Part shown: positions 3,379 to 61,519 of the stretch, piece by piece
Position numbering within the stretch: the stretch's first letter is position 1
Layout: each line of letters opens with the position of its first letter
Position numbers and translations under genes: made by a program
Assembly (NCBI RefSeq): GCF_001194135.2
Contig: NC_068986.1
Location: forward strand, 51,378,297-51,442,296
Reading direction: 5' to 3'
Length of the DNA stretch: 64,000 nucleotides
Source of the DNA: Octopus bimaculoides
Taxonomy: Eukaryota
Notes under the pieces: generated by a model
Told to the model about the DNA's origin: nothing
Databases searched by the model: none
The model's input: only the letters and a program-made list of their open reading frames with translations

Positions 3379-3414
<36 letters not shown>

Positions 3415-4106: not shown

Positions 4107-4151
<45 letters not shown>

Positions 4152-4747: not shown

Positions 4748-5111
4748 AGGGTTCCAGTTGATCCGATCAACGGAACAGCCTGCTCGTGAAATTAACGTGC
4801 AAGTGGCTGAGCACTCCACAGACACGTGTACCCTTAACGTAGTTCTCGTGGATATTCAGCGTGACACAGTGTGACACAGCGTGACAAGGCTGACCCTTTG
4901 AATTACAGGCACAACAGAAATAGGAAGTAAGAGTGAGAGAAAGTTGTGGTGAAAGAGTACAGTAGGGTTCGCCACCATCCCCTGCCGGAGCCTCGTGGAG
5001 CTTTAGGTGTTTTCGCTCAATGAACACTCACAACGCCCGGTCTGGGAATCGAAACCACGATCCTATGACCGCGAGTCCGCTGCCCTAACCACTGGGCCAT
5101 TGTGCCTCCAC
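4748..5111 (-). mobile_element. tRNA-derived SINE, family A (full length, young)
   Basis: A/B-box-like head ggaggcacaatggcccagtggttaggg...gtttcgattccc. Perfect 16-bp TSD taaggattctctgaat at 4732-4747 and 5112-5127. Near-identical to 13576-13945 and 21661-22103. Confidence 0.92.
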
Positions 5112-5183
5112 TAAGGATTCTCTGAATCTCTGTTTGATTTTATCTTTATTGGGGTTTTTTTATATGTATATTTTCATTGCACT

Positions 5184-5400
5184 CAAGGCGGAGAGCTAGC
5201 AAAATCGTTAGCACGCCAGAAAAAATGCTTAGCGACATTTCGTCCGTGGTTACGTGCTGAGTTCAAATTCCACCAAGATCGACTTTGCCTTTTATCCTTT
5301 TAGGGGTCGATAAAATAAGTAACCAGTTGAACACTGGGGTTATGTAATCGACTTAACCCTTCCCCCGAAATTTCTGGCCTTGTGCTAAAATTTGAAACCA
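5184..5400 (+). mobile_element. SINE family B (Meta-domain-like core)
   Basis: Core gactttgccttttatccttttaggggtcgataaaataagta. Perfect 16-bp TSD atattttcattgcact at 5168-5183 and 5401-5416. Confidence 0.9.
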
Positions 5401-6570
5401 ATATTTTCATTGCACTTTATTGTACCTTTACACAAAATTAAGGGTTTTCTTTTCTGTTCCTTTATTTATTTATTTTTATTTACGTTCCAGTAATTATCTA
5501 CTATGCATACTTCATTAGAGTTTTCTAGTTTGTCTCGAATCATTTCGGAATGTGCCGGTCGGGTATATTCTCACTATTGCCGCAATGTATCAAGTAATTT
5601 TCTGATTTTGCTCTTCAGGCTCCTTACTTCACGTTAAATATCAGAAAATAAGAGGAGTGCGAATGAACCAAGATAATTCAGTGGACTTGCAGATCGGCGC
5701 CTGGAGAGAAAAGTACATGTTGGTCAATATCGAGCCGAAATGAATGTCCTGTAAAGATATTAAGAGTGTAACACTGGCCATACTTCTTGGTGAATAGGAA
5801 CAGAGTTGTTTCTCGTAAATGAGCTAAGAAGAAACTATCTCTGAAGTGGCGAACGCAAAGATGACCTCCGTCTTTATAACTGTCTGACCGTCGTGTCTTG
5901 AACCAGTTTTCATTTTCACTAACTGAAGCATCAGCTCTTTTGTTTCTTGTAGGGAAAGGGTACATTCCACTTGTTAGGTTCATCTCTTGCCAACATCTCT
6001 GCGCTGAGGACTCGATATGTTATAGCTGATGATGCCCAGGCATGCGCTGAGTCTGCAAATATTTCCGGATGTAGTAACGGTTTCTGAGGCACGTTTTCTT
6101 GTATTTCGTATGACTGACAGGAGCGCCTGGCAGCTGGAATATTATTAGGGACATTTTATAGTAGACAACATTAAATGGATTGAAGACTGACACTCCTCTT
6201 TGGTCAAGTCCTCATTAATTTTTTTCAAGTTTCCCTTGAAGACTAAAGTGAAAGTAGACAGGCTGGTGCTGTCATCTGGTGGAATTTATGAAAAGTGAGC
6301 AAGATTATGAAAAATGCGCTTGTAGGCCAGTGTTGATAACTGAAATAGAGTTCTCGTCCTTTGTAGTTAGGGTAATTCTGGATTCCACTTACTGTTACGT
6401 TTAATTTCATATCTTTTGCATACTTTTCTTTTCCGAGTGTGTATTTTTTTAATAATTTCTGATTACACCCATACTGTTCTTTTCAATTTGTCCCTGTAAT
6501 ATTTCCTTCATCTCATATCTTGATGATTTCTACTAAATGATAGAAATCATCATCATTATTATTATCATTT

Positions 6571-7000: not shown

Positions 7001-7067
<67 letters not shown>

Positions 7068-7295
7068 GTTGTTGTTGTTATTATCATTATCGGGCTGGCA
7101 GAATCGCTAGCACGCTGGGCAAATGCTTAGCGGTATTTCGTCTATTTTCACGTTTTGAGTTCAAATTCCGCCGAGGTTGACTTTGCCTTTCAACCTTTCA
7201 GGGACGACAAAATGAGTACTAGTTGAGTACTGGGATCTCTGCGATCGACTTAACCCCTTCCTCCAAATTACTGGCCTTGAGCTAAAATTTGAAAT
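6571..7295 (+). mobile_element. array of 3 family-B SINEs separated by (ATT)n
   Basis: Copies at about 6571-6790, 6800-6985 and 7091-7295, all in the same orientation. Confidence 0.85.
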
Positions 7296-7307
7296 CATCA
7301 TCATCAC

Positions 7308-7352
<45 letters not shown>

Positions 7353-7889: not shown

Positions 7890-8345
7890 AACAATTGGGC
7901 AGGGAATCGTCAGATCTGGCTGAGGAAAAGCTTTGTGAAAAATATTTATTAACTGATCAATAGAAAGTGACACTGTGGAGAAGACTTGAAAAGTTCTGGA
8001 GTGTTTATTATACAGTTTACTTAATCACAGAGTTGTCAAACAAAGAGAACGCCACTACGAGTTGTTATAATATTGATGAGTGAATGCTTTACCTTTCAAT
8101 AGAACTTTTTTAAGGATATGATTTAATATGTTTGTAGTGTGGTAGCGGATCCGTATCTGATGTGAGTGCAGTACTCAAATTTCTAATGCGAAACGAGCTC
8201 ATACCTTGTAGAGAGTCAGTGATTGTTTAAAGTTGAATAGGAAATCTAAGTTTTGGAAATATAACATCGGCTACGTTGAAGATGTGTTGTTGCCATGAAA
8301 TATCATCCGAGGTTGTGATATTAAGCATTTGTAGAAAAGTTAAAA
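7890..8345 (-). mobile_element. decayed CR1/Jockey-type LINE fragment
   Basis: Frameshifted pieces DISWQQHIFNVA, LYK and EYCTHI resemble the post-RT motifs LSWxxHI...LYK...LEYCSHIW. Confidence 0.5.
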
Positions 8346-9093
8346 AGGTCGTTATTGATTGGTCTTTATGAGTAGAAGAGATTTGATGTTTCTATAGATG
8401 CTTGTTCTTCATATTTCCTAGTGTTTAATGATGAAAAAGGGGCTGGGTGGCGAAGGGTTTAGAGACTGGATAATATATAGAGAACTCATACAAAGAGGAT
8501 CGTAGATTTAATGTGGGCCCTTGATCTGCCAGAAATAGCAATCAACTCTCCTTCAAATCACAATCAGACCCGTCACTTTAAATAAGCAAATGATACTTTG
8601 GATAAAGGCCAAGACAAATTTAAAAAGATGAGGTGGTTACAAGTGGAATGCATTTGACTAAAGATGTGTATATAGACATCTATCCATATGTCTTCCTGTC
8701 TACCTGGCTGGCTAGATTTGCCTGTCTGTCTGTCCCTCTGTATGTATGCATGTATGTAATTATAACTCTAGTGACCACTTAGTTTTTTTTACTTCTGTTT
8801 CCATTATTACGATTTTAAATACTTCGTAATACATAAACTAAAAATGTTTCTACGACTACGTTATTCCTGCTTGCGAATGTAACAATATACTATCTGCTGG
8901 AGTGTTTCTAATTGTTGTTAATATTCTTGTTGCCGTTAATATTGATATGATTATCGTTATTACTGTTGTTATTATTAAGCATATGCGTGTGTATATGCGC
9001 ACACAGATATGCATATAGTAACCTCTAAACACATCAGGAGAGTATTGGATCCTCATTGTCGTCGTCGTCATCATCATCACCTTCAGCATCACC

Positions 9094-9645: not shown

Positions 9646-9687
<42 letters not shown>

Positions 9688-10178
9688 TATTTTTTTTTTT
9701 TTTAAAGCGATGAGCTGGCAGAATCATTAGCACACCGGGCAAAATGCTTAGCAATATTTCGTCGGATTTAGCATTCTAAATTCAAATGCCGCCGAAGTCG
9801 ACTTTACCTTTCATCCTTTCTGGGTCAATGAAATGAGTACCAGTTGAACACTGGGGTCGATGTAATCAACTTAGCCACCTCCCCCAGAAACTGCTGGCCT
9901 TGTGTCTAAATTTGAATTCATTATTATTATTATTATTACCTATTATCATCATTATTATTATGAAGGTTGTCACCTGGCAGAATCGTTAGCAAGCCGGGCA
10001 AAATGCATAGCGGCATTTCGTCCGTCTTTACGTTCTGAGTTCAAATTCCGCCGAGGTCGACTTTGCCTTTCATCCTTTCGGAGTCGATAAAATAAGTACC
10101 AATTGAACACTAGGGTCGATGTAATCGACTCATCCCCACCTCCAAATTTGCTGCCCTTGTGGCAAAATTTGAAATTAT
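9241..10178 (+). mobile_element. array of 4 family-B SINEs separated by (ATT)n
   Basis: Copies at about 9241-9440, 9512-9650, 9706-9920 and 9964-10178. Confidence 0.85.
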
Positions 10179-12269: not shown

Positions 12270-12304
<35 letters not shown>

Positions 12305-12530
12305 CATTATCATTAAAGCTGCAAGCTGCTAGAATCATTAGCATGCTGGACAAAATGCTTAGCAACATTTTGTCCGTCTTTATGTAATGAAATCAAATTC
12401 CGCTGAGGTTGACTTTGCCTTTCATCCTTTCAGGGTCGATAAAGTAAGTACCAGTAAAGTACTGGGGGTAGACCAAATTGACTTGCCCCTTGCTCTTAAA
12501 ATTTCTGGCCTTGTGCCAAAATTAAAAAGA
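11546..12530 (+). mobile_element. array of 4 family-B SINEs separated by (ATT)n, CpG-decayed
   Basis: Copies at about 11546-11760, 11792-12008, 12037-12265 and 12316-12530. Confidence 0.85.
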
Positions 12531-13281
12531 ATTATTATTATTATTATTATTGTTATTATTATTTCTAATATCCCCTTTCTGTATACCATGGTATAAAAGT
12601 GAAAAAAAAAAAAATGGTTATTTTTTGTTATTGTTGTTAATATTCATTTTTTTTTAATATATTTTTTTTTGTTGTTGTTAATACATCTTGCTGATTGTTT
12701 ACAAATTGTCATGATCAGATCAATGATAAAAATGAAAAAAAAAAAATTAAAAAAGAACTAAAAATAGATACAAAAGACATTTACATGAAGATACATAAAA
12801 ATATGGGCACACACACACACAGACATATATCACACACATATGTAAATATAAATACACACATACATATATAAGTACATATATATATATTTGCATATATGTA
12901 CATTTATATGCAGTATGTATGTATATGTGTGTCTATATATATGTGTGTGTGTGTATGTATGTATATATATATATATGTGTGTGTGTGTGTATGTATATAT
13001 ATAAAAATATATATAATGTTGACAAAAGAAAACTATAAACTACTACCAGTTGTTTACATCTATCTTACAAGTCTATGAAAGCAAATCATAAATGATGTTA
13101 CACGTTAGAAAGCCTATTAATAAAAATTGATTTGAAAAATAATTTATAATGTTTTATCTCTGGTGTTTGTTGATCTTTTATTTGTTTTCCTGTATTTTGC
13201 ATTTTGTTGAATGTATAGTAATATCTCACTTTATAAGGACCTGCTTTACAAGACCCTGGATTTATGAGTTTTAATTTTCAA

Positions 13282-14490: not shown

Positions 14491-15429
14491 AGGGTTCAGA
14501 GGTCAAAGTGTGTTCTGTGAGTAACTTTATGCAAATAAGCCAAGTGACTCTCTATATTTTTTATTCTTTATTTCATTCTATTATCAGTTTTAGCCAGAGG
14601 CTGTGGGCATACTTGGGTACTGCATGGCACTTCTCAAACATTGCTTTTGCTTCATTAATCTTCATAAGTTCTTCATAATCTGACAAAGTTTAATCTTCTG
14701 GTGATTTTAGTGGAATAAACTTTGTTACAAGCCTTTAGGTTAGGTTCCTAGTATGAACATGACTTCTTCCATCAGTCATTCAGACCCTGTAGTGGGACAT
14801 TGGCACAACCCGGAGTTCTCTTCAAAAATAGATAAATAAATGGAAAACATCTAGGCATCATTCTTAATGAATAGACATTAAGAAAAACAAATTTAGTGTT
14901 GTATTCACTGGATTACTTTCGTCTGCCTCCGATATATATTTATTTTTAAACCCAACACGTTCATAAAAGATATTATCTCTGAATGAATACTACATTAAAT
15001 TGCATTTCAGGATGTATTTACATTAAGTATGAGTCATATATGGCTCTTTTAATCTGATATTGCTTCTGTTGATTATAACGAATATTCTATCAACTAGGTA
15101 GCAATTTGCAATACTTGTGATATCAATGGCAGCAAATTTCATGTAAGCACACCTTTGGTTGTGAGTACATGCTTTTGACAGCATATGATGAGGCAGAAAT
15201 GCATTAGTCATTCTCACCAGCCACTGCTGAAGGATTTTTGACTGTTTTTAAATACCTCACATCTCAGAATGAAAACTGTAGTAAATTCGCCTTTCATGTA
15301 TTTATATGAAGTATATATACCGATGGCTACTTTAATCAAATACTGCTTTTAGATGAAAAACATATAGATGGTTCAAGCAACTGAGAGAAATTTTATATGG
15401 TTGCTCAAAATTTTCCTTAAAATACACTT

Positions 15430-17206
15430 CCAGACAATAATACAGGAATTCAAGACAGGATGCCCCTGGGAGCTCCTCTATGCTGATGACCTTGCTCTAA
15501 TTGCTGAGTCACTATCAGAACTAGAGAAGTTTCAGGTGTGGAAGCAAGGATTAAAATTGAAGGGCCTTAGAGTCAACCTAGCTAAAACGAAAGTTCTAAT
15601 AAGTAGGAAGGTAGACAAACCACAAACCCCTTCAGGTAGATGGCCCTGCTCGATCTGTAGAAAAGGCGTAGGTAGAAACTCTATAAGATGTACCCAGTGT
15701 AAGCTATGGACACATAAGAGGTGCAGCAATATCAAAGTAAGGCTAACTAGGAAGATAGTTTTTGTATGTGGCAGATGCTCAGGCGCAATAAACACTGAAA
15801 ATGTGCAGAAAACAACTTCTGCCACATTCCAGGGAAAAAAACTAGAAGTAGTTGATAGCTTCCGTTNNNNNNNNNNNNNNNNNNNNNNNNNNNNNNNNNN
15901 NNNNNNNNNNNNNNNNNNNNNNNNNNNNNNNNNNNNNNNNNNNNNNNNNNNNNNNNNNNNNNNNNNNNNNNNNNNNNNNNNNNNNNNNNNNNNNNNNNNN
16001 NNNNNNNNNNNNNNNNNNNNNNNNNNNNNNNNNNNNNNNNNNNNNNNNNNNNNNNNNNNNNNNNNNNNNNNNTGACAAAGGGCCTCTCACTTAGAGTAAA
16101 AAGCAGACTGTATGATGTATGTGTACAAATAGCCATGCTACATGGCAGTGAAACATGGGCCATGACTGCTAAGGACATGTGTAAGCTCACAAGAAATGAA
16201 GCCAGTATTCTCCGATGGATGTGTAATGTCAGTGTGCATACTCGACAGAGTGTAAGTACCTTGAAAGAAAAGGTGGCCCCAAGAAGCATCAGTTGTGGTG
16301 TGGAAGAGAGACGATTGCACTGATATGGTCATGTGGCGAGAATGGATGAGGATAGCTGTGTGAAAAAGTACCACACCCTTGTGGTTGAGGGAACCTGTGG
16401 AAGAGGTAGACCCAGGAAGATCTGGGATGAGGTGGTGAAACATAACGTTCGAACTTTAGGCCTCACCGAGGCAATGACTAGTGACTGATACCTTTGGAAA
16501 TATGCTGTGCGTGAGAAGACCCAGAAAGCCAAGTGAGACCATAATCTGTGGCCTTTACCAGGGGTGTAACCAGCCCACTTATGCGTACCTTTCCTTCATT
16601 GGACACTAAACTCTGCTTGCAAAGACCTCTTGAGGCAAGTGAAATTGAAATCGAACCAAATTCGACGACTGGCACCCATGCCACCCTTTCCTTCATTGGA
16701 CACTAAACTCTGCTTGCGAAGACCTGTTGGGGCAAGTGAAATTGAAATCATAATTGAACCAAATTCGATGACTGGCACCTGTACCAGTGGAGCGCTAACA
16801 GCGCCATCCGAGCGTGATCATTGCCAGAGCAGCTGTCTGGCTTCTGTGCCGGTGGCACGTAAATAGCATTATTCAAGCATCATTGTTACCAGTATCGCCT
16901 TTCTGGCATGTGAAAAAACATTCGAGCAAGATCGTTGGCAGTGCAGGTGGCACGTAAAATACACCATTTTGAGTGTGGCCGTTGACAGTACCGCCTGACT
17001 GGCCCTTGTGCCGGTGGCACGTAAAAGCACCCACTACACTCTCGGAGTGGTTGGTGTTAGGAAGGGCATCCAGCTGTAGAAACTCTGCCAGATCAGATTG
17101 GAGCCTGGTGCAGTCATCTGGTTCACCAGTCCTCAGTCAAATCGTCCAACCCAGGCTAGCATGGAAAGCGGATGTTAAACAATGATGATGATGATGATGA
17201 TGATGA
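15430..17206 (+). mobile_element. 5'-truncated RTE-clade LINE (RT with PHD insert, C-terminus, long 3' UTR, (GAT)n tail); pseudogenised
   Basis: WELLYADDL (YADD at 15479-15490), LRVNLAKTKV and EVVDSF. After the gap: MLHGSETW, RLH*YGHVARM and GRGRPRKIWDEVV, with a stop at 16534-16536. Internal stop codons are present. The 3' end reads ggaaagcggatgttaaacaa(tga)n. Confidence 0.93.
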
Positions 17207-21102: not shown

Positions 21103-21168
21103 TGCTGAAACTCGGGATTGAACAGGGACCTTTAGATCTTCAGTCTAACACTCTCCCAGCTGAGCTAT
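21103..21168 (-). pseudogene. tRNA-Phe(GAA) pseudogene, 5' acceptor strand lost
   Basis: Minus strand ATAGCTCAGCTGGGAGAGTGTTAGACTGAAGATCTAAAGGTCCCTGTTCAATCCCGAGTTTCAGCA matches metazoan tRNA-Phe except for the first 6 nt, a 1-nt deletion and five transitions, three of them at CpG sites. Confidence 0.88.
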
Positions 21169-21366
21169 ATGTATATGTATTTTATATATTTCACTTAGGC
21201 ATAGAGTACTAATAATCTGTCATTAGAACTCAATATACAGATGCATCAGAAGAAAGCATTAGCAGATAAAGAGCATAATAAGAGATTAAATAAACAACAA
21301 GGAAATAAGAAATTATATGTATGTATGTATGTGTGAGTGTGAGTATGTGTGTGCATGTATGTATGT

Positions 21367-22961: not shown

Positions 22962-23681
22962 AAATATATCTATAAATTATAACATACAATACGTAAATAT
23001 AATAAATACACGTATATATGTATATTTATGTATGTATATATATGAATATTTATGTATGTATATATATATATTTATATATGTATGTATATATGTATATATA
23101 TATATATATGTATGTACGTATATATATATATATATATATNNNNNNNNNNNNNNNNNNNNNNNNNNNNNNNNNNNNNNNNNNNNNNNNNNNNNNNNNNNNN
23201 NNNNNNNNNNNNNNNNNNNNNNNNNNNNNNNNNNNNNNNNNNNNNNNNNNNNNNNNNNNNNNNNNNNNNNNNNNNNNNNNNNNNNNNNNNNNNNNNNNNN
23301 NNNNNNNNNNNNNNNNNNNNNNNNNNNNNNNNNNNNNNNNNNNNNNNNNNNNNNNNNNNNNNNNNNNNNNNNNNNNNNNNNNNNNNNNNNNNNNNNNNNN
23401 NNNNNNNNNNNNNNNNNNNNNNNNNAGAAGACAATTTTTGTTCAAACATAACTAAAACAAATATATAAACAAATATAAGTGTTTCACACTGGAAACAAAA
23501 AAAAAAACAAAAAAAATTAAAACAAATGAATTAAAATAATAATAATAATAAATAATAATGATAAATACAGAAAAGTTAGTATGTTTTTTTTATACCAATT
23601 CTCAAACTGACACACCTTGATAATTTAAAGAAAAGGATGTGGGGAGGGGAAAATAAACCATTGTGAAAACATATTTCCAAA

Positions 23682-23728
<47 letters not shown>

Positions 23729-23979
23729 AACGAGAGAATAGAAAGATAAAAAAGATTCAGGGTAAAAGAAGGAAACCCTCATATTATTAATATATTTTTT
23801 TGTTTGTTTAACACTGGAGTAAATACACAAGAAGCAAACAATATAAAAATCGTTTGACAATAGATGGGTTGTTTGATGGAGATGACATTGAGGTACATTT
23901 TTTTGTTTTTTGTTTTGATTTCTTTTTTCTCTTCCCCATATTTCCAAAGATTAAATTAAGTTCTTCCTTGTAGACCACT

Positions 23980-24028
23980 CACTACAGGTTTCTAATATAT
24001 ATTCCGGACAAAAATATCCTGGTGAGCT

Positions 24029-24123
<95 letters not shown>

Positions 24124-24225
24124 GTATGCGTATATTTACAAATATAGGTATATTTATGCATATATATATATAAAGAATGTATGTGTATATATACATATAT
24201 ATATATGTACATATATATATGTATA

Positions 24226-24260
<35 letters not shown>

Positions 24261-24535
24261 GTATATATATATATACACATACATATATATACATGTATAT
24301 ATATATACACATATATAAAAACACACATATATATACATATATATATGTATATATATACATATATATATGTATATATATATACATATATACAAATATATAA
24401 ACATATGTATGTGTATATATAAATATATATACACACATATACATATATATACACATATATATACATATACATATGCACATATATTTACGCACACACACAT
24501 ATATGTATATATACACATATAATTACATATATATA

Positions 24536-24606
<71 letters not shown>

Positions 24607-25019
24607 GTATATATATATATACACATACATATATATACATGTATATATATATACACATACATATATATACATGTATATATATATACACATATATAAAAAC
24701 ACACATATATATACATATATATATGTATATATATACATATATATATGTATATATATATACATATATACAAATATATAAACATATGTATGTGTATATATAA
24801 ATATATATACACACATATACATATATATACACATATATATACATATACATATGCACATATATTTACGCACACACACATATATGTATATATACACATATAA
24901 TTACATATATATAGACATATATATATACACATATATATATACGCACACACATATATGTATATATACACATATAATTACATATATATAGACATATATATAT
25001 ATACACATATATATATACG

Positions 25020-35017: not shown

Positions 35018-35055
<38 letters not shown>

Positions 35056-35059
35056 GTAT

Positions 35060-35502
35060 TAAGGTGGCAAGCTGGCAGAATTGTTAACACACCAGGCAAA
35101 ATGTCTAGCGGCATTTCTTCTGTCACTACATTCTGAGTTAAAATTCTGTAGAGGTCAACTGAGCCTTTCATCCTTTCAGGATCAGAAATTAAGTACCAGT
35201 TGAACTCTGGGGTTGATGTAATCAACTAGTTCCCTCTCTGCCAAATTTCAGGCCTTGTGCTTAAATTAGAAAAGACTATTATTACTATTATTATTAAGGC
35301 AGCAAACTAGCAGAATTTTCGACATGCTGGACAAAATACTTAACCACTTTTTATCTGTCTTCATGTTCTGAGTTCAAATTCTGCCATGGTCAACTTTGTA
35401 TTTCATTTTTTTCAAGGGTTGATGAAATAAATTCCAGTTGAACACTGGGGTCTATGTAACTCACCCACAAAATTTCAAGCCTTGTGCCTATAGTAGGAAG
35501 GA
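35060..35502 (+). mobile_element. 2 family-B SINEs in (ATT)n
   Basis: Copies at about 35060-35278 and 35297-35502, with heavy CpG decay. Confidence 0.8.
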
Positions 35503-36127
35503 TTATTATTATTATTATTATTTTCATTATTATGCCTCTCCTGCTTCAGTAGCAATAATTGGATGAGATTGTAGAATGTTCCCAGATATTTTAGAGCCTA
35601 CTGTCCAGAGAATTAATCTATGTAGAAATAGAGAGCAATGTGATGCTGTAGTACATGAAACATAGTTTCATGCAACAGTTGTGCTAGAGACATGGATGTA
35701 TACAGTTATTTTGAAAAGTACTTTAACCCATTCAATCAACAAGGTCACCTAAAGTTTTAATATACTTTTGCATAACATTGCTTTCTGGATATTAACATTA
35801 ATGAGTAAATATGATTGGTGTACTAATCCATACACTGATTTTTTTATATATTAACATTGAGCAATTATAACTGATGAACCAATCCACACTTTATGAGTTT
35901 GAGTAAATAATTAGAATCAAGAAAGATTGTTGTTGTTGTTTTTATCTTTAGTAGAAACACTAACACCAAGTATAAATAATGAGCTGAAATTGTTGAATTA
36001 GATCAATTTAAAGTAAAATTACTGACTATTTGATTGATAGTGTTGATATTTATTGGTCAAAGAAGATGGTTTAATAGTCCTTAAGTTTCATATTAAATGT
36101 TAATATATGTGTGTGTATGTGTATGTG

Positions 36128-36172
<45 letters not shown>

Positions 36173-36779
36173 NNNNNNNNNNNNNNNNNNNNNNNNNNNN
36201 NNNNNNNNNNNNNNNNNNNNNNNNNNNNNNNNNNNNNNNNNNNNNNNNNNNNNNNNNNNNNNNNNNNNNNNNNNNNNNNNNNNNNNNNNNNNNNNNNNNN
36301 NNNNNNNNNNNNNNNNNNNNNNNNNNNNNNNNNNNNNNNNNNNNNNNNNNNNNNNNNNNNNNNNNNNNNNNNNNNNNNNNNNNNNNNNNNNNNNNNNNNN
36401 NNNNNNNNNNNNNNNNNNNNNNNNNNNNNNNNNNNNNNNNNNNNNNNNNNNNNNNNNNNNNNNNNNNNNNNNNNNNNNNNNNNNNNNNNNNNNNNNNNNN
36501 NNNNNNNNNNNNNNNNNNNNNNNNNNNNNNNNNNNNNNNNNNNNNNNNNNNNNNNNNNNNNNNNNNNNNNNNNNNNNNNNNNNNNNNNNNNNNNNNNNNN
36601 NNNNNNNNNNNNNNNNNNGATAGATATTATTAAAAAAGAAAGATCTACATGCTAACTAAAGGAATAGTTTGATTTCATTTCTTTTGCATAAAATGTTTTA
36701 AACTGGCTGACTTGATAAAACTAGAGAGATAAATAAACTTACAGGTCACAAAAATAGTCTCTGAATGTCAAAGATTTAT

Positions 36780-42654: not shown

Positions 42655-43012
42655 GGAGTCATACAGCACATGGCTCAGTAGTTAGAGCGCTGGGTTCACA
42701 ATCATGAGGTAATGAGTTCAATTCCTGGACTGGCTGTGCATTGTGTTCTTGAGCAAAGCACTTTATTTCACATTGCTCCAGTTCACTCATCCGTAGAAAT
42801 GAGTTGTGACGTCACTGGTCCCAAGCTGTATTGGCCTTTGCCTTTCCCTTGGATAACATCAGTGGCATGGAGAAGGGAGGCTGGTATGCATGGGCAACTG
42901 CTGGTCTTCCATAAACAACCTTGCCCAGTCTTGTGACTTGGAAGGGAACTTTCTAGGTGCAATCCCATGATCATCCATGACAGAAGATCTTTACCCTTTA
43001 CCCATACAGCCA
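42655..43012 (+). mobile_element. tRNA-derived SINE with a V-domain-like segment
   Basis: Head ggctcagtagttagagcg...gttcaattcctgg, then gagcaaagcactttatttcacattgctccagttcactca. Confidence 0.65.
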
Positions 43013-44165: not shown

Positions 44166-44314
44166 TTAGAAAAATCTCTTAACTTCAATGCATTGCTATG
44201 TGGCCAATGCAAGTATGAGGAAGCAGGTATTTAGACAATGATTAGGGCAATGATGTGTAAATATCCATTGAACAATATAAAATTGATATACATACATATA
44301 TGTATGTATATATA

Positions 44315-44355
<41 letters not shown>

Positions 44356-46014
44356 NNNNNNNNNNNNNNNNNNNNNNNNNNNNNNNNNNNNNNNNNNNNN
44401 NNNNNNNNNNNNNNNNNNNNNNNNNNNNNNNNNNNNNNNNNNNNNNNNNNNNNNNNNNNNNNNNNNNNNNNNNNNNNNNNNNNNNNNNNNNNNNNNNNNN
44501 NNNNNNNNNNNNNNNNNNNNNNNNNNNNNNNNNNNNNNNNNNNNNNNNNNNNNNNNNNNNNNNNNNNNNNNNNNNNNNNNNNNNNNNNNNNNNNNNNNNN
44601 NNNNNNNNNNNNNNNNNNNNNNNNNNNNNNNNNNNNNNNNNNNNNNNNNNNNNNNNNNNNNNNNNNNNNNNNNNNNNNNNNNNNNNNNNNNNNNNNNNNN
44701 NNNNNNNNNNNNNTGAATGCAATCAGACATCACTGCAACAAAAAGTCTACATCTGCGAGCTAGCTAGCAAACTATATAAGCATCTAAAAAGTCTAAAGCT
44801 ATTACAGCAAGCAAGACTAATAGAATATCATTAATTTACTTTAATAAAATCAAAACTCAATATGCTAAAATGGGAGAAAAGGAACAAAATTTGAACAGAA
44901 ATTTTGAATTTATATTTCATTTTCTGTTAATTGAACTATTCTTCCAATCAACAAGATGCTATTATACTACTGGATTCTGTTTGGAGAGCTAATTAAGTGT
45001 AAAAGTAGTTCCAAGGAATTCTGGTGTTGTGTGACAAACTTTCTTGAAAGACACCAGACTGAAAATATCAATTTTATTACCATGTTAAAATATTGCACTT
45101 TAAGCTTGGCAAGATTTCTGTTGCTGTCATATCTATTCTTGAATTTGAAATTATTGTTATCTCACTTCATCAAAATCAAATTATGTTAAAGGCTGTATAA
45201 GTCAAAGACCCTGTTTGTTAGGCATGACACAGATATATTGAAGTACATTTACATACAGTAACACACACTCAATTGCATTTTGTTTATGTTGTACTCCTAG
45301 CTTAATTTTATTGGATAAGATATCATCAGTATGTGCATACTAAATGATGTGTCATAAGCTAAGATACATCAGATTTAATTCTATTATTCTTCTGACATCA
45401 CATATAATACTATTGAGTTTATGTGTATTAAAATGTGAGTGCTTTAACCTGGTGGTGTGAAGAAACACTCAATGCACTCTGAAAAGTGGTTGGTGCTTGA
45501 AAGAGCATCTAGTCATAGAAATGATGCCAAAGTTGACACAGAATCTTGACACAGCTCTAAGGCTTGCCAGATACTGCCGAAATGTCCAACACATGCCAGC
45601 ATAGAAAATGGATGTTAAATATTGATGATGATGTATTTGTATGCAATACCTTCAGTGTCTATGAATAAAAGTCTCATTATCATCAATCATGGTATGTTAC
45701 AATCTGATTTCAGTATTTATTTGCAGTATACAAAGATGTATTTTTAGGCTATTAGTTTCTCTGCCTGATGTGTCCATTTGTGAATCTTAGTCTTGTTAGA
45801 TGTTTATGTCTCAAAGAGAGATCCATAAGAACCAGTTCATTACAGCCCAGATAGGATAAAAAACAAAAAACCCCAAAAAGGAAGTTTTTTTTTCATGGAC
45901 TGAACTGTCTCAAAGTTCTAGATTCACCTGCTTGTGAGAAATTAACTTTACTGTTCAATGATGATTACTCATGATCCCAGTGGTTGGAAACAGCAAACTG
46001 CTAACTAGAATATA

Positions 46015-53900: not shown

Positions 53901-54981
53901 AAGTCACAACATAAGTGACCATTTAAACTACATTATGTGAACTGCAGAAGAAACTACCTTAAAAATTGATTGGAAAATTAAGTCATTCATTTTAACCAAA
54001 CAAAATTAATCAGAGAGAATAGAAAACAGAGAACAATTCTAACAGATGCTGCTTACCACAGAAATACTAAATTGCAGACTGGTAACAGTAATAGCAGCCT
54101 AAAAACAATGGCTTAAGAAAGAATAAGTAGAAGTTGCTGTTTACTTGGATCTTATAAGCCTAATTCCTATGCAAGTTACTAACATCAAAGAGACATGAAT
54201 GGAAAAGGAAAGTAAAATCAATAAGTTTTCTTCTTCTTTTTTAGCTAAATAGTTTAATTTAGTTCAGAAGAGAACATCTGCTACTGAGTACCATAATACA
54301 GAGGTGTACTAAATCTCAGGTCAGCAAGATATACAGAAGAGGAATCAATTTGCTAACATTTTGTTTCATATTATGGCACCCTTTATTTTACATTCGAAGC
54401 CTGTTACTTAAAAAACCAAATTTTTAAAAAATCACTTACATGCATGAATACATGAATCACTAAATGCACTGATATTTTCTCCACTTTTTCTATTATTTAT
54501 AATACATATTACAAAATTCAAAGTTTTATGCTTTTATTAACCAGACTTAAGCCTCCCTTAGAATTGCATAATGGTACTATTAATAATGCATTTTTCTCTT
54601 TCAGCAACAGTAAATTCAATAACAGCTGTCACTGGTCTTACCAAACATAGTAAAAGTTTCATGGCAAGTTCACAAAATCTACGATACTTATAGCATCATT
54701 TATGATTAATATAAATTTATTGCATTTATCCAGTCTAAAGCAAGATATTTGGCATAGTACTAGATCAAGATATAAGCTAAATCGCAACACAATAACACAT
54801 AATTGCAGCACACTCAAATCTCCAATGTGTAATACACAGAAAAGATAAACAATTTTTCAATATCAGATGATTATAAAGTTTCTTTTTAATAACTAAGAAA
54901 GTCGATCATTTACATACAACTTGCATACACTCACCACTATATATACATATATTTATACACATAGTGCAGTAGTTTACTGAC

Positions 54982-55081
54982 CTGCGTTGACTGTTATGGC
55001 CTCAATGAACTGTTCTCTCCAGGAAGAAGTGCTAACTACAAGAGATAAGTTAGCTTTCTTTAATAACTTGTCAACCACACT
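54982..55081 (-). CDS. SLC8A: Na+/Ca2+ exchanger internal exon, 100 nt, phase 0 to 1
   Basis: Acceptor ttatattttcag|AGT and donor GCAG|gtcagt. Translates SVVDKLLKKANLSLVVSTSSWREQFIEAITVNA(G), versus NCX1 STVDKLIKKTNLALVVGTNSWREQFIEAITVSAG (recalled), with the same exon boundaries. Confidence 0.96.
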
Positions 55082-55399
55082 CTGAAAATATAAAAGGAAA
55101 CGTGATTTGATTCCAAATGGCAGCAGGTAAATATTTCATCCTCACAATTAATCTTGGTTAGGTGAGGGACATTAGAGGGAATAGCTGGGTGTGTTTGTTA
55201 GGTTCTCAGATAAACAGACAAAATACTGGCAGTTTTCAACCTAACACTGCACTATGTGTCTTTTTTAATGGTCAAGTTCACTAAGTTGAAAATAAACACT
55301 ATGTTCAGAACAACTCACCATTATAAGCAATAACATTGCAGAGTAATATAGTGTAATGTCAGTGTGTATGGATGACAAAGAACAGATTCGCCAAGAGAA

Positions 55400-56050: not shown

Positions 56051-56541
56051 AGTTAGCATTAAGTACTGAGTTTAACACCTAGGGAAATAACTTTGGGAAG
56101 AACAAAACTGATCAATTTGTATTAACCTACATACCCAGTATTAGGAGAAAGTCTTTGATAGAATCTCATGAACCAAAGACCCAACAAGTTATGAGACTAA
56201 TGTGAAACAGTCAAAACATTGGTATTAAATTTTAAAGAACTGTTCCCAATCTCATTATGGAAAACTAAAAAAAAAAAATACTTATAAATTTCTAGAAATT
56301 CTGCGAATTAGTATTTTATCTAAGAAAGTAAGTCATTGAAACATAAAACTGTTCCTTCCACTTTATATATGATAATTGATAATTGATGATAAATATTATA
56401 TTGTTGAGAGTCATAAAAAACAAGTCAATAATTTTGCTAAGTTGAAATCATCTTATAGAGGTAAAGATAAAACTCTGTTCCAGCTTTAAATTGCTTTTAA
56501 TTCAGTGTTCCTTTGCACTTCAATGACTACAACTGAAAATA

Positions 56542-57397
56542 CAGTGTTTGGGCTAAATTTGACAGTTTGCGTTAAAGGAAAAGAAAACTTAATATCCCAT
56601 CAAAAAATAAAAGTATTTAAAAAAACAAAAAAAAGCACCAACTAGATTATGGCTGGGAGATATCAATTTACTAAAAGTAGCCATTCTCAGCTTCCATCAT
56701 GGAATCAAAATGGATCTGGAACCTGGTGCATGTGTTCCCCACTGTGTCCTTTTTGAACAGTTCCTTGATATTGATCAACCAGCTTGGCCTTGGTGTTGCA
56801 GGCAGAGCAGTTGGTGTCTTTCTCAACTGCATCCCATAGTAATCCATGGGATTATAATTGGGAGAGAGGTCAGAAATTAGGGCAGGTGAATTCATAGACA
56901 TTTTGACAACCACTTCTGTCATTTTTCTGGAGGTATGGCAAGGAGCCAAAACTTGCTGCCGCACATATGGCCTTCCCATAGGAACCCTTACTAGCCAAGA
57001 ATTTACCACAGTCACCAACAGTTTCACATAGCTGTCTGAATTGAGCTTAAGGCCTTGCTCAAAGATGTGAAGATGAACTCAAGTGTGGTATGCAGATGCG
57101 GTCAGAATGACTGTTGTGTCCTGCTGGCCAGGACTTTATAGTCTCCTTTGCAGTTATCCATGTCATGTCTTACAGCCTTTACAGTGATTACAGAGCACTG
57201 AGCAGCAGCCATGATGTTGACATTTTGATATGAGGTGTGAATCCTCATGTTGCATGTTACTCTTTTCCAGTATTCAGATAGCTTCCGGCCTCCATGTTAG
57301 CTAACATTTTCTCTCAGTAACAACTTTAATCTTTTTGCTCTCCAATGACTGTTTACCAGGAGACATAAAACATCATCAAATTTAGCCTTTTACAGTG
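56542..57397 (-). mobile_element. Tc1/mariner (maT/DD37D-like) element, internally deleted, inside an NCX intron
   Basis: Imperfect TIRs TA|cagtgtttgggctaaatttgac and tcaaatttagccttttacagtg|TA. Remnant HIFEQGLKLNSDSYVKLL...GRPYVRQQVLAPCHTS...SPNYNPMDYY...EAENGYF. Confidence 0.85.
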
Positions 57398-57640: not shown

Positions 57641-57762
57641 CTTGAATTCTGTGCTCTCAGTTATGTGAACTGTAATCTTGATATTTTCACCACGTCTCGG
57701 TTTACCAAGTTCCACCAACACAGGATCATCTTCCTCCTGCTGTACATTTTCAGAACTACTAC
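57641..57762 (-). CDS. SLC8A: Na+/Ca2+ exchanger internal exon (end of CBD2), 122 nt, phase 1 to 0
   Basis: Acceptor tctcctttag|GT and donor AAG|gtcagt. Translates (G)SSSENVQQEEDDPVLVELGKPRRGENIKITVHITESTEFK, matching NCX1 EEEERRIAEMGRPILGEHTKLEVIIEESYEFK (recalled). Joins in frame to 54982-55081. Confidence 0.93.
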
Positions 57763-58258: not shown

Positions 58259-60496
58259 CTGTTTAAATATTCGCATAGCAATCAACAATATTTTAGCAAT
58301 CAAAGCCAAGAAGTAAATCAGCGTATGATATATAATAACAAAACTATGTAATGCACTGTCATATATGTGTTCACAGGTGTGCTAAAACCTCAAGTGATGC
58401 AAAAGTAAACCATATTTGACATTCACTCACCATTCTTCTATTGTATTAGTCCATTCCTTTATAGCTTTAAGGTGTTTATTCAGATAATTAGAAAGTTAAG
58501 ATTTGAATCTGAAAATCTTGTAATTTATTATTATATTTTTTTAAAAAAGGGGAAAAAAAACTTTAAAAAAAAACCCCATTTACCCAACAATCTCAATTAT
58601 ATTAGGGATGTATAAAAACTTCATTAATACATATGGTAACTCTAGCATGCTGATGCCATTTTGCTGCATATTTGAAAGAATCTATTGCTTAAAAACACAT
58701 ATAATATCAAATAACATCTTGTCATATAGTAAACCCAAGTTCCTTAATAATCTTAATAATCCTAATGGGAAAACTTATTACAGTCATGAGCAAACTGTGG
58801 TCTGAAGGACTTGCTGAATGACATGCTTCACTTCATGAGAAAAATGATATACATATGCATAATTGTGCAACTTTCCTGATTATGGGTTATGTGTCATGCA
58901 GCCTGTCTCAAGAAAGGTTGCCTACTCTTGATTTATTGCATACTTTTAAACTTATCTTTCTTCAAATTTCATTGCAAAGAAAATTAGAATTTGTGTACTC
59001 GTTGAAATGGTACACGTAATTTGTTTCTCAACTTAATATTCCACTATCTGATCCTTCGATACCTTTTGTAGTGTTCCCTCAGTTGCAAGCAGTTTTGGAG
59101 ATTCTGTAAAATGGACATGGGTGCTACCAATCCTCTCTGATGCTCATATAACAAATATAATAGAATAAACAAATAAATAAAAGCCACATTCTTAAAAAAA
59201 GACAGCTATGTTATTTATATTCTTTTGGTGAATATTTTAAAGAATATAACAGTTTTAAAACTTGGGGGCTTTTTTATATTTTCTGCTCTTATTTTAGATG
59301 TTTTAAATCAGAACTTTCTTTCCATCCTCATAAGGAAAATCTTTAAATTTATAAAAGAAAGGAAGGACAACATTTAATAACTTAGTATTTCCAAAATTAT
59401 TTTATCAAAATTCTTTAAAAAAAATTAAAAGTTTGAAAGAAATATGTGCTTTAGACACCAAACATAATGGTAGAAGCTCTTAATCATAGATATTAACCCA
59501 GAGATTGTTGTAAACATAAAAACACACATATACGATGAGGTTTTGATTTTTTTTTTTTTTTCAAAAGGATGTTGCTTCAAATAATTCTAATAACTTTGTA
59601 GGAATATAAAGCTGCAAAAAAAAAAAAAAAAAAAAAATGAAACATAACCTTATACATTAGTCCTCACTTTCATGATGAAAGTTCAATACTGAAGAACTAA
59701 AAGAAACAATCATGAAATTTCTTAAAACTGTTATTCTTTCCAGAGAAAGTGAATGCAGTGATTTTATAATTTCACATGAAATAACTGGTTGAAAATGAAA
59801 GACCAATTGAATATGTGTGAAGAACTGTTTCCTCTCAAAACAAACTCAAACCTTCACATGTAAAAACCTTAGATGTAAAAAAAAAAAATCTACCCAACAA
59901 ACACATCTACAATACATAAGAACAGTACTAGAATGTTCTAAAAACATTATCTCTCCCATTTGGTACACAGAAACATAAAATACACTGGTACACAAAAATG
60001 GCTGCATCCTTAATATGTTCAATAACCCCAGACAATGTGTTACAATACACATCACCAAAATAAGTGTAGGCAAACAACAACAGTTATGTACAGGTATATC
60101 TTGAACAGAACAAAAGATCTGTGGGTCACACTTTGGCATTTAGCCAATTACCTGTGTTAAAGATCTGCTCTTTGCTCATGGATCACCTAGGGCAACAAAA
60201 ACGCAACAACAACCTTGCTTTAAAAGACATGGTAAAAGGCACTTAAACTAGGACCATCCTGTTTTATTCATTTCTTTCTTTTTTTCCAATCAGTGTGTGC
60301 CCTGAGCTATCTTATCTAATGTATCATTCCTTTTTAAAACGATAGTTTCAATCAACAAAAAAAAAAAAAAAAAAAAAAAATCAGCCATTATTTCCAGCAA
60401 GTCAAGAAACTGCAAAGAAAGGCTACCTTGTTTGTTCAACAATTTACAATATTAAGCAGAGACAGCACTACAAAACTGATTAATGTTGATATATTG

Positions 60497-61225
60497 GTTT
60501 CAAATTTTGGTACAAGGCCAGCAGTTTTGGGGAAGGAGTGGGGGTAAGTCGATTACATCGACCCCAGTACTCAACTAGTACTTATTTTATCAACTCCCAA
60601 AGTATGGAAGACGAAGTCGACCTGGGCAGCATTTGAACTCAGAACATAAAGACAGCCTAAATGCTGCCAAGCATTTTGTCAAGGATGCTACCAATTCTGC
60701 CACTTTGCTGCTGTGATTAATGTTGATATATTACTACTAAAATCACATCATCTATGAAGTTGCTATGACTGAATGGATTACAGAATCTGTTAACTATATC
60801 AACAGGACGCTAGGATTGATTATTGACTAATATTGAATAAGCTATAGCACTTAAGAAATTTTCATTGTGCTGTGTAAAGGCCGATATTACAGGCTACATT
60901 TAACATAACTGAAAGAAATAAAACAAAAATAAAGCACCACTCCTACTAGACAATTAAATGGTAAATAGCAGAGAGGAAATAGTTTTATGATCCTATAAGT
61001 TTACACAAATCACTGCTGAGCCATCTACAATCCATGCTAGCAGGATTTTCATTGTACCTTAGTTTTGTTGCATAAAAATGCTCTGCAAAGGGTGCTTGAA
61101 AGTAAGCATTAGTAAGATTAGTTAAGAACAGTCTCATGAGAAGAGAAGAGCAGGCTAGAATTATAACAGATTTAACTGTAATAATGAAATATTCTTTAAC
61201 GGAATACATTCAGATATTTTTATAA

Positions 61226-61257
<32 letters not shown>

Positions 61258-61480
61258 TAATAATAATCGTTTCTACTATAGGTACAAGGCCTGAAATTTG
61301 GCGGGAGGGACTAGTTGATTATATCGAGCCAGTGTTTCACTGGTACTTAATTTGTCAACCCCGAAAAGATGAAAGGCAAAGTCGACCACAGCGGAATTTG
61401 AACTCAAAACGTAGTGATGGGCGAAATACCACTAAGCATTTTGCCTAGCATGCTAACAATTCTGCCAGCTCACTGCCTTC
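60497..61480 (-). mobile_element. 2 family-B SINEs (60497-60716, 61268-61480)
   Basis: Reverse-complement family-B core. The second copy is flanked by (AAT)n. Confidence 0.8.
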
Positions 61481-61482
61481 AC

Positions 61483-61519
<37 letters not shown>

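What the first reader, a model, noticed from the sequence alone, without database searches (positions are those of the whole stretch)
55031..55033. Genomic Ser where NCX has a conserved Gly: candidate A-to-I recoding site
Seen: codon 17 of the exon is AGC (LVV-S-TSSWREQF), and the A at 55033 (minus strand) is in a U-A-G context. Established: vertebrate NCX1-3 have Gly here (LVVGTNSW), and from memory so do Calx and squid cDNA. Coleoids recode transcripts heavily by ADAR, whose preferred context is 5'-U and 3'-G. One A-to-I edit gives GGC = Gly. Inference: a restorative edit that tunes the CBD2-TM6 linker by tissue or temperature.
Basis: partly seen in the sequence, partly recalled or inferred. 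Interest (0 to 1): 0.75.

Follow-up and report, generated by a model that had tools for sequence, protein, structure and literature searches.

The report
Octopus NCX Ser-for-Gly candidate editing site
A sodium/calcium-exchanger exon in what is most likely an octopus genome encodes serine where nearly all animals, including a cuttlefish, encode glycine. The responsible A sits in a setting that RNA-editing enzymes like, but no RNA data could be reached, and published base rates make a plain hard-coded serine the more likely answer.

Summary
Codon 17 of a real NCX (SLC8A) exon (minus strand, 55081-54982) is AGC (Ser), and its A at 55033 has a 5' U and a 3' G.

Human NCX1, fly CALX, gastropods, an oyster, annelids, arthropods and about 200 other homologues have Gly here. 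The cuttlefish Acanthosepion pharaonis orthologue matches the exon at 33 of 34 residues and differs only by Gly at this codon. The window shares repeat families with an Octopus bimaculoides scaffold. The A is therefore a derived G-to-A change in a coleoid, a "potential restorative site" as Jiang & Zhang (2019) define it.

The A pairs with a U in a local exonic hairpin (z about -3). A stronger version of that hairpin exists in a distantly related coleoid transcript and is absent in non-cephalopods.

No RNA evidence was reachable. Only 2.3-3.4% of such sites are edited at all in octopuses, mostly at low level. Ser (TCC), Asn, Ala and Lys occur at this position elsewhere, so Gly is not obligatory.

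My estimates: hard-coded Ser with little or no editing about 0.6; detectable editing about 0.25; functionally restorative editing about 0.07.

The parts
54982..55081 (-). NCX (SLC8A) exon encoding SVVDKLLKKANLSLVVSTSSWREQFIEAITVNA(G). By alignment to human NCX1 it covers the CH2 helix after CBD2, a short hinge, and the start of the membrane-embedded helix TMH1, which includes the mapped XIP-binding segment.
   Evidence: Canonical AG and GT splice sites and an open reading frame. It aligns to human NCX1 residues 688-721 with E=3e-11. It matches the Acanthosepion pharaonis SLC8A models at 33 of 34 residues. Structural context comes from PMC10550945 and PMC7296346.
55031..55033 (-). Codon 17, AGC (Ser), at the position of the near-universal Gly (G706 in mature human NCX1 numbering). 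The first base, A at 55033, is the candidate editing target in a U-A-G context.
   Evidence: Orthologous codons are GGC in the coleoid transcript L004, GGC in L002, GGA in L001 and GGA in Elysia L005.
55024..55060 (-). Predicted exonic hairpin. The outer stem is 55060-55056 paired with 55028-55024 (AAGAA/UUCUU). The inner stem is 55054-55048 paired with 55037-55031 (GCUAACU/AGUUAGC). The loop is 55047-55038. The target A at 55033 pairs with U at 55052, the third base of Ala codon GCU.
   Evidence: P(pair) is 1.00 with 0 to 800 nt of flank. The 44-nt segment folds at -9.9 kcal/mol with z=-3.08 and 0 of 200 shuffles as stable. The homologous hairpin in coleoid transcript L004 folds at -15.3 kcal/mol with z=-3.21. 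It is absent in the three non-cephalopod homologues tested.
57641..57762 (-). Upstream NCX exon covering the end of CBD2: (G)SSSENVQQEEDDPVLVELGKPRRGENIKITVHITESTEFK. Acceptor AG is at 57764-57763 and donor GT at 57640-57639.
   Evidence: It aligns to the cuttlefish sequence GSSSGSVVEEDDPVLAELGKPRRGENIKITVHIIESTEFK.

Best explanation
This is a genuine exon of a cephalopod, most likely octopus, Na+/Ca2+ exchanger gene. A single G-to-A transition (GGC to AGC) has replaced the ancestral hinge glycine with serine. The hinge lies between the CH2 helix of CBD2 and the membrane-embedded helix TMH1.

Most likely the exchanger in this species simply carries Ser at this position, as a tolerated lineage-specific substitution. 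Any A-to-I editing back to Gly would be absent or low-level.

The A does lie in an ADAR-friendly setting: 5' U, 3' G, and an A-U pair inside a coleoid-conserved exonic hairpin. It is therefore a legitimate but unproven candidate for 'restorative' (harm-permitting) recoding.

What is shown directly is the exon, the codon, the ancestral Gly, the sequence context and the predicted, conserved hairpin. What is inferred is the species (octopus), the polarity of the change, and everything about editing.
For: Exon and codon.

Gly in human NCX1 and CALX. Gly in gastropods (Aplysia, two Elysia species, Batillaria), an oyster, annelids, arthropods and vertebrates, 115 of 117 proteins. The cuttlefish genome-derived models P0128, P0133 and P0241 match the exon except for Gly, and P0133 reads through into the intron, so it reflects genomic sequence. 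Coleoid transcript L004 has GGC.

Octopus origin: O. bimaculoides XP_014790009.2 begins exactly at the next exon and lies on a separate 11.6-kb scaffold. The window shares about 270-bp and 290-bp interspersed repeat families with that scaffold at 72-85% identity.

Tolerance of non-Gly residues: Ser encoded by TCC, plus Asn and Ala, occur in alternative exon copies of L003. Ser occurs in shark P0025 and Lys in sturgeon.

Base rates: the fraction of potential restorative sites that are edited is 0.0226 in O. bimaculoides and 0.0344 in O. vulgaris. The median level is below 2.5%, and about 90% of such sites are edited at less than 20%. A squid NCX-like ORF has only 7 recoding sites.
Against: The position is otherwise very strongly conserved, and the rest of the exon matches cuttlefish exactly. 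A neutral Gly-to-Ser change at a functionally important hinge is therefore somewhat surprising.

The A combines features that are rare in this window. U-A-G context together with a perfect local stem of at least 7 bp with at least 3 G/C per arm applies to only 5 of 19,624 As.

The hairpin is conserved across deeply diverged coleoids. Third codon positions differ at 1 of 8 sites in the stem against 28 of 57 outside it (one-sided p=0.054). That pattern resembles what has been reported around coleoid editing sites (PMC7703385).
Confidence: 0.6

Rival explanations
1. Functionally restorative A-to-I recoding. ADAR deaminates A55033 in a substantial share of neural NCX transcripts. This regenerates the ancestral Gly (IGC read as GGC) at the CH2-TMH1 hinge, perhaps in a tissue- or temperature-dependent way. 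The exonic hairpin acts as the substrate, and pre-existing editing allowed the G-to-A mutation to fix (harm-permitting model).
For: The A is a derived A at an ancestral G in a coleoid. The context is U-A-G. A +1 G or T is associated with higher editing level in coleoids (PMC7703385). The A is paired with probability 1.0 in a hairpin with z about -3 that is conserved, and stronger, in another coleoid but absent outside cephalopods. Restorative sites are enriched and more strongly edited than other classes. Squid NCX is known to be recoded at 7 sites. The hinge sits next to elements that control Na+-dependent inactivation and XIP binding.
Against: There is no RNA evidence. The base rate is 2-3.5% for any editing, and only about a tenth of those sites exceed 20%. 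The stem is only 12 bp with bulges and -9.9 kcal/mol, which from general knowledge of ADAR substrates is short. No long-range partner stands out within -9 to +12 kb. The exon as a whole is not unusually structured (z=-1.05 for the exon and -0.58 for 300 nt). An A-U pair is a less favoured target than an A-C mismatch (general knowledge). The hairpin exists equally in species with genomic G, so it need not exist for this site. Ser is tolerated here in other lineages.
Confidence: 0.07
2. Incidental low-level editing. The A is deaminated in a few percent of transcripts because it happens to sit in a hairpin with a good motif. The protein pool stays essentially Ser and there is no functional consequence.
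For: This is the typical fate of coleoid sites. Median levels are below 2.5% and about 90% of restorative sites are edited at less than 20%. The favourable motif and pairing are shown.
Against: Even any detectable editing is the minority outcome for potential restorative sites at 2-3.5%. My upward adjustment for context and structure is an estimate, not a measurement.
Confidence: 0.18
3. Assembly or sequencing error, or a heterozygous or private polymorphism of the sequenced individual. On this reading the species' usual allele is GGC (Gly).
For: The window is a gap-rich draft with 12 N runs totalling 3,167 N. The exon matches cuttlefish at every other residue. A G/A transition is the commonest kind of SNP or error (general knowledge).
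Against: There is no positive evidence. The surrounding sequence is clean, is not low-complexity and is far from any gap.
Confidence: 0.05
4. The Ser exon is one member of a cluster of mutually exclusive alternative exons, as in locus L003. A Gly-encoding sister exon would lie outside the window or in a gap, so both Ser and Gly forms would arise by splicing rather than editing.
For: L003 has five tandem copies of this exon with Asn, Ala, Ser, Gly and Gly at the position. Its Ser copy shares the TVNAG ending with the window exon. Many invertebrate gene models contain duplicated TM6/7 exons.
Against: A profile search of all six frames of the window finds only one copy. The three cuttlefish gene models and the coleoid transcript show a single exon of this type. 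Elysia has one copy. The L003 Ser codon is TCC, which indicates an independent origin.
Confidence: 0.03

Closest known systems
Restorative ('harm-permitting') A-to-I recoding sites of coleoid cephalopods (Jiang & Zhang 2019, PMC6881472; Shoshan et al. 2021, PMC8382921)
   Same: The site is a genomic A in a coleoid coding sequence. A-to-G is nonsynonymous and would recreate the amino acid found in ancestors and outgroups. That meets the published definition of a potential restorative site. The motif and predicted pairing fit what is reported for edited sites.
   Different: Editing itself has not been observed here. The category 'potential site' is large, and only 2-3.5% of its members are edited.
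Functionally characterised editing of cephalopod ion transporters and channels, such as squid Na+/K+-ATPase, the Kv1 temperature-related sites and Kv2 (from my own knowledge; Garrett & Rosenthal 2012 is cited in PMC8382921)
   Same: The proposed effect is the same kind of thing: a single recoding event in a membrane transport protein at a gating or regulatory element, possibly tuned by temperature.
   Different: Those sites have RNA evidence and electrophysiology. This one has neither. No paper in the searchable library reports a specific NCX recoding site. The only relevant item is a count of 7 sites in a squid NCX3-like ORF.
Mammalian GRIA2 Q/R site
   Same: It is the textbook case in which the edited codon encodes the functionally preferred residue and a genomic G would serve equally well. 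Shoshan et al. discuss it as harm-permitting.
   Different: GRIA2 is edited almost completely, and from general knowledge this depends on an intronic complementary sequence forming a long duplex. Here only a 12-bp exonic hairpin is predicted and no intronic partner was found.
Alternative-exon diversification of NCX regulatory regions: mammalian NCX1 exons A-F, and the tandem exon copies seen in locus L003
   Same: These also diversify the regulatory loop between CBD2 and TM6. In L003 the very residue in question varies among exon copies as Asn, Ala, Ser, Gly and Gly.
   Different: The mechanism is splicing rather than editing. No second copy of the exon is present in the window or in the cuttlefish models.

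Membership tests
NCX / SLC8A Na+/Ca2+ exchanger gene | Sequence homology of the exon to the segment between CBD2 and TM6 of known NCX proteins | tested here: met
   The exon aligns to human NCX1 688-721 with E=3e-11 and to CALX with E=3e-6. It matches cuttlefish SLC8A at 33 of 34 residues. Pfam itself has no model for this linker.
NCX / SLC8A Na+/Ca2+ exchanger gene | Presence of Calx-beta and Na_Ca_ex membrane domains in the same gene | tested here: inconclusive
   The window holds only two exons, the end of CBD2 and the linker. The membrane exons are not in the window. The O. bimaculoides C-terminal part, which carries the Na_Ca_ex domain, lies on a separate scaffold.
A-to-I (ADAR) recoding site | Genomic A read as G in RNA (a DNA/RNA mismatch) | not testable with these tools
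   No reads or same-species transcripts were reachable. Exact-ORF look-ups failed, a metagenome scan found nothing, and the editome papers or tables are not held.
A-to-I (ADAR) recoding site | ADAR-compatible neighbours (5' base not G, preferably U or A; 3' G favoured) | tested here: met
   The triplet is U-A-G at 55034-55032. Only 3.6% of As in the window's minus strand are in UAG. The association of +1 G or T with higher editing level is from PMC7703385.
A-to-I (ADAR) recoding site | Target adenosine lies within double-stranded RNA | tested here: inconclusive
   A local 12-bp interrupted hairpin is predicted, with P(pair)=1.0 and z=-3.08, and it is conserved in another coleoid. It is short and weak at -9.9 kcal/mol. 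The exon as a whole is not significantly structured and no long duplex partner was found. This is prediction only.
A-to-I (ADAR) recoding site | Host is an organism with pervasive neural recoding (a coleoid) | tested here: met
   The exon is near-identical to cuttlefish NCX, including the lineage-specific TVNAG ending. Repeat families are shared with an O. bimaculoides scaffold, and the gene split matches the O. bimaculoides annotation. The exact species is inferred, not proven, and Nautilus is not formally excluded.
Restorative (harm-permitting) editing site sensu Jiang & Zhang 2019 | The post-editing amino acid equals an ancestral amino-acid state | tested here: met
   Gly is found in cuttlefish, gastropods, a bivalve, annelids, arthropods and vertebrates.
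Restorative (harm-permitting) editing site sensu Jiang & Zhang 2019 | The site is actually edited in the focal species | not testable with these tools
   The reasons are the same as for the DNA/RNA mismatch row above.

The most novel reading that the evidence does not exclude
Octopus NCX carries a genomically fixed Ser at the hinge between the CH2 helix of CBD2 and the membrane helix TMH1. In neurons this is converted back to the ancestral Gly at high and regulated levels, for example in response to temperature. A coleoid-conserved exonic hairpin that predates the G-to-A mutation guides the edit. The animal would then switch between two exchanger forms that differ in Na+-dependent inactivation or Ca2+ activation.
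Probability: 0.06. Interest if true: 0.55.

Novelty: new member of a known kind. Interest (0 to 1): 0.3.

Why it matters
If the A is edited at meaningful levels, this would be a clean case of restorative recoding at a mechanistically understood spot. The hinge joins the Ca2+-sensing domain's CH2 helix, which is needed for Na+-dependent inactivation and Ca2+ activation (PMC10550945), to the membrane-embedded TMH1 and XIP-binding segment (PMC7296346).

Ser and Gly variants could be compared directly by patch recording. The site would also bear on the debate over harm-permitting versus adaptive editing.

If the A is not edited, the finding is an ordinary lineage-specific substitution at a conserved hinge. 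Coleoids have tens of thousands of recoding sites, so one more candidate is not surprising in itself.

Tried and rejected
1. Exact look-ups of window ORFs in public assemblies, to identify the species or find other copies, found nothing.

2. A scan of JGI metagenome contigs for the 30-mer around the site, with R at the target base, found nothing.

3. The site-level editome papers (Liscovitch-Brauer 2017, Birk 2023, Albertin 2015) are not held.

4. Supplements of Shoshan 2021, Jiang & Zhang 2019 and Moldovan 2020 contain no NCX entries in the text that is held. The Alon 2015 supplement gives only a per-ORF count.

5. A search for a long-range editing-complementary sequence gave no clear hit. 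Duplex energies of the 41-nt target against 1,013 windows from -9 to +12 kb had several ties at about -26 kcal/mol and no clear outlier. An earlier attempt timed out. Inverted-repeat search found nothing that pairs with the target region.

6. I looked for extra copies of the exon in the window to test the mutually-exclusive-exon idea. Only one copy was found. A marginal hit at 56319-56447 (E=0.36) has the wrong spacing and was rejected.

7. Genomic DNA of the cuttlefish locus could not be retrieved. Intron conservation and the cuttlefish codon at DNA level therefore remain unchecked.

8. The organism of assembly GCA_029980185.1 (L003) could not be identified from the literature.

9. The Aplysia locus that was returned did not contain the exon.

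10. I guessed that the 118-aa ORF at 56671-57027 was a mariner transposase remnant. Pfam gave no hit and I dropped the idea.

It served only as a probe, and every conclusion rests on database sequences.

Full report
**1. What is at the coordinates**

Read on the minus strand, the region contains a well-formed exon. It has a polypyrimidine tract and an acceptor AG at 55083-55082. The exon is 100 nt (55081-54982) and is followed by a donor GT at 54981-54980. Its phase-0 translation is SVVDKLLKKANLSLVVSTSSWREQFIEAITVNA(G).

Codon 17 is AGC at 55033-55031. The base before the A is U (55034) and the base after it is G (55032).

A second NCX exon lies 2.5 kb upstream at 57762-57641 and encodes (G)SSSENVQQEEDDPVLVELGKPRRGENIKITVHITESTEFK, the end of CBD2. 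No further NCX exon is found in the 55 kb downstream. The window is a gap-rich draft with 12 N runs totalling 3,167 N.

**2. Is Gly really the rule at this position?**

Yes. Human NCX1 (PDB 8jp0, 8sgi) reads LVVGTNSW and Drosophila CALX (3rb5) reads VLGTSSW.

Three database searches returned 240 homologous fragments and proteins. In one search, 82 of the 83 exon fragments that fitted the search motif had Gly, and all but one of those that did not fit it show Gly on inspection. In one search, 115 of 117 motif-bearing NCX proteins had Gly. The Gly-bearing set includes these groups:
- gastropods: Aplysia, Elysia chlorotica, E. crispata and Batillaria
- the oyster Magallana gigas
- annelids: Dimorphilus and Lamellibrachia
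- arthropods and vertebrates

The exceptions are informative:
- A bamboo-shark partial protein has Ser (P0025, LVVSSSSW).
- Two sturgeon proteins have Lys.
- P0042, from the unannotated assembly GCA_029980185.1, has Ser.

At that last locus (L003) the Ser codon is TCC. It contains no A, cannot be edited to Gly, and is two mutations away from any Gly codon.

L003 also carries five tandem copies of this exon, with Asn (AAC), Ala (GCC), Ser (TCC), Gly (GGA) and Gly (GGG) at the position. It has two copies of the TM6/7 exon as well. This looks like clusters of mutually exclusive exons. Gly is therefore strongly preferred but not obligatory.

**3. Which organism?**

The best-matching named proteins are three SLC8A gene models of the cuttlefish Acanthosepion (Sepia) pharaonis: P0128, P0133 and P0241. 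Across the second exon they match the window at 33 of 34 residues, including the unusual TVNAG ending. The only difference is Gly in place of Ser. P0133 and P0241 read through the donor into intron sequence (TVNAG|QCTNTS...), so they reflect genomic sequence rather than cDNA.

A spliced transcript contig from run SRR8281690 (P0125, locus L004) encodes the same peptide as the cuttlefish models over these two exons and has GGC at this codon. It is 82% identical to the window at nucleotide level over 197 nt, with nearly all differences synonymous. That indicates a deep split within the coleoids.

The 90% cluster containing P0133 also holds O. bimaculoides XP_014790009.2. That protein begins exactly at the next exon (GDDDDDSEEEKLPSC...) and lies on a separate 11.6-kb scaffold. 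This fits a gene that is split across scaffolds at a very large intron.

The scaffold (L007) shares interspersed repeat families of about 270 and 290 bp with the window at 72-85% identity, in many copies. It also has the same 10-N gap style.

I conclude that the window is cephalopod and most probably octopus. This is inference. Nautilus is not formally excluded, although the huge intron, the draft style and the shared repeats argue for octopus.

**4. Polarity**

Cuttlefish, the second coleoid, other molluscs, annelids, arthropods and vertebrates all have Gly. The window's A is therefore a derived G-to-A transition. [quoted passage not shown]

**5. RNA structure**

In every folding context from the bare exon to ±800 nt, A55033 pairs with U55052 with probability 1.00. 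U55052 is the third base of the Ala codon GCU.

The hairpin has an inner stem GCUAACU/AGUUAGC (7 bp), a 10-nt loop and an outer stem AAGAA/UUCUU (5 bp). It folds at -9.9 kcal/mol with z=-3.08, and 0 of 200 shuffles fold as well. Changing the A to G keeps the hairpin through a G·U pair (-9.6 kcal/mol, z=-2.46).

The homologous segment of the other coleoid (L004) forms a longer version, GAAGAAGGCUAAC...GUUGGC.ACUUCUUC, at -15.3 kcal/mol with z=-3.21. The homologous segments from L003, Elysia and L001 do not form it (z=-1.0, +0.24 and +2.1), even though they encode nearly the same amino acids.

Between the two coleoids, third codon positions differ at 1 of 8 sites inside the stem and at 28 of 57 outside it (one-sided Fisher p=0.054). 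That is suggestive, but it rests on two sequences only.

Within the window's minus strand, 3.6% of As are in UAG. Only 0.6% lie in a perfect local stem of at least 7 bp with at least 3 G/C per arm. Just 5 of 19,624 As have both properties.

Several results point the other way:
- The exon as a whole (z=-1.05) and a 300-nt context (z=-0.58) are not unusually structured.
- No long-range complementary partner stands out.
- A 12-bp interrupted stem is short for an ADAR substrate (general knowledge).
- The hairpin exists in a species whose transcript carries G at the site, so it predates the A and was not built for it. If it serves editing at all, it may serve other adenosines, for example in the Lys codons of the 5' arm.

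**6. Base rates from the literature**

In the Jiang & Zhang source data, the fraction of potential restorative sites that are edited at all is as follows:

| Species | Fraction edited |
|---|---|
| O. bimaculoides | 0.0226 |
| O. vulgaris | 0.0344 |
| squid | 0.026 |
| cuttlefish | 0.0355 |

Median levels are below 2.5%. In squid, 13% of restorative sites exceed 20% editing, and in octopus about 10% do.

A squid ORF homologous to human NCX3 has 7 recoding sites, and an NCX2-like ORF has none.

Editing level rises with +1 G or T and with local structure, and edited As are often G in sister species (PMC7703385). These points raise the odds for this site, but I can only estimate by how much. My estimates are about 25% for any detectable editing and about 6-7% for editing high enough to matter.

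**7. Functional context**

By alignment to human NCX1, the residue corresponds to G706 in mature numbering. It lies three residues before S709, where the mapped core XIP-binding segment 709-SWREQFIEAITVSAGEDDDD-728 begins (PMC7296346).

In the cryo-EM structure, the CH2 helix follows βG of CBD2 and is the main contact of the inactivation assembly. Removing it abolishes most of the Ca2+ activation and Na+-dependent inactivation. Residues 708-757 form the membrane-embedded helices TMH1 and TMH2 (PMC10550945).

The Gly therefore sits in the short hinge between CH2 and TMH1. That a Gly/Ser exchange here would alter regulation is plausible but untested. The natural occurrence of Ser, Asn, Ala and Lys at this spot elsewhere suggests that any effect is modulatory rather than disabling.

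**8. Verdict**

I add one supporting feature, the coleoid-conserved hairpin with the A paired inside it. I also add two cautions: the low base rate, and a non-editable Ser at the same position elsewhere.

The editing event itself could not be tested with the resources available. It is best described as a reasonable but unproven candidate for a well-known class of site. The most probable reality is a hard-coded Ser with little or no editing.

Noticed in passing
L003 (GCA_029980185.1, JARPMW010000519.1) 3074-5452 and 8114-9030: The NCX gene of an unidentified invertebrate has five tandem copies of the linker exon, with Asn, Ala, Ser (TCC), Gly and Gly at the focal position. It also has two copies of the TM6/7 exon. 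These look like clusters of mutually exclusive exons. The C-terminal region is 75-77% identical to Elysia and Aplysia NCX.
   Followed up: partly
Proteins P0121, P0123, P0124, P0129, P0130, P0135, P0144: Gene models of NCX from a tick, a mayfly, an annelid, mites, an amphipod and a springtail contain two or three consecutive copies of the GTSxP TM6/7 segment. In most of them successive copies lie 53 residues apart (115 in the tick). Tandem alternative exons have probably been concatenated by the gene predictors.
   Followed up: no
window 54957-54970 and 55246-55259: A perfect 14-nt inverted repeat (ACACATAGTGCAGT) brackets the exon, with one arm in each flanking intron. The 14-mer occurs nowhere else in the window. 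However, 58 of 400 Markov-simulated regions also contain some perfect 14-nt inverted repeat, so it may be chance. If real, it could loop out the exon.
   Followed up: partly
window 42672-42999, and about 290-bp copies at 5199-5411, 7056-7347, 9670-9961, 12282-12571, 35028-35296, 60492-60708, 61222-61513 and elsewhere: Two interspersed repeat families, SINE-sized, are shared with O. bimaculoides scaffold LGKD02010700.1 at 72-85% identity. I used them only as a taxonomic clue.
   Followed up: partly
window 15368-15865 (+), running into the gap at 15867: A retrotransposon remnant. The ORF carries the C-terminal part of a reverse transcriptase (RVT_1, E=1e-4, below Pfam's cut-off) followed by a PHD finger (E=6e-6).
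   Followed up: partly
window 21108-21170 (-): A marginal tRNA-like match (Rfam RF00005, 30 bits against a gathering score of 29). It may be a degenerate tRNA or the head of a SINE.
   Followed up: no
window 23000-25000, 36100-36620, 44230-44720 and elsewhere: Long TA/TG/CA-rich microsatellite tracts, which translate as 'YIYIYI...' ORFs, flank most of the assembly gaps. Overall G+C is 33.4%.
   Followed up: no
L004 1-321 (Logan SRR8281690 contig): This coleoid NCX transcript contig starts with about 300 nt of intron-like sequence that runs directly into the exon encoding GSSSGSVVEEDD. It suggests a retained intron or an incompletely spliced RNA.
   Followed up: no
Proteins P0133 and P0241 (Acanthosepion pharaonis): Two cuttlefish gene models read through the donor of the focal exon into intron sequence (TVNAGQCTNTSFLSL...) before rejoining at EGDDDQEEGEEEKLPSC. 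This is a likely annotation artefact.
   Followed up: no
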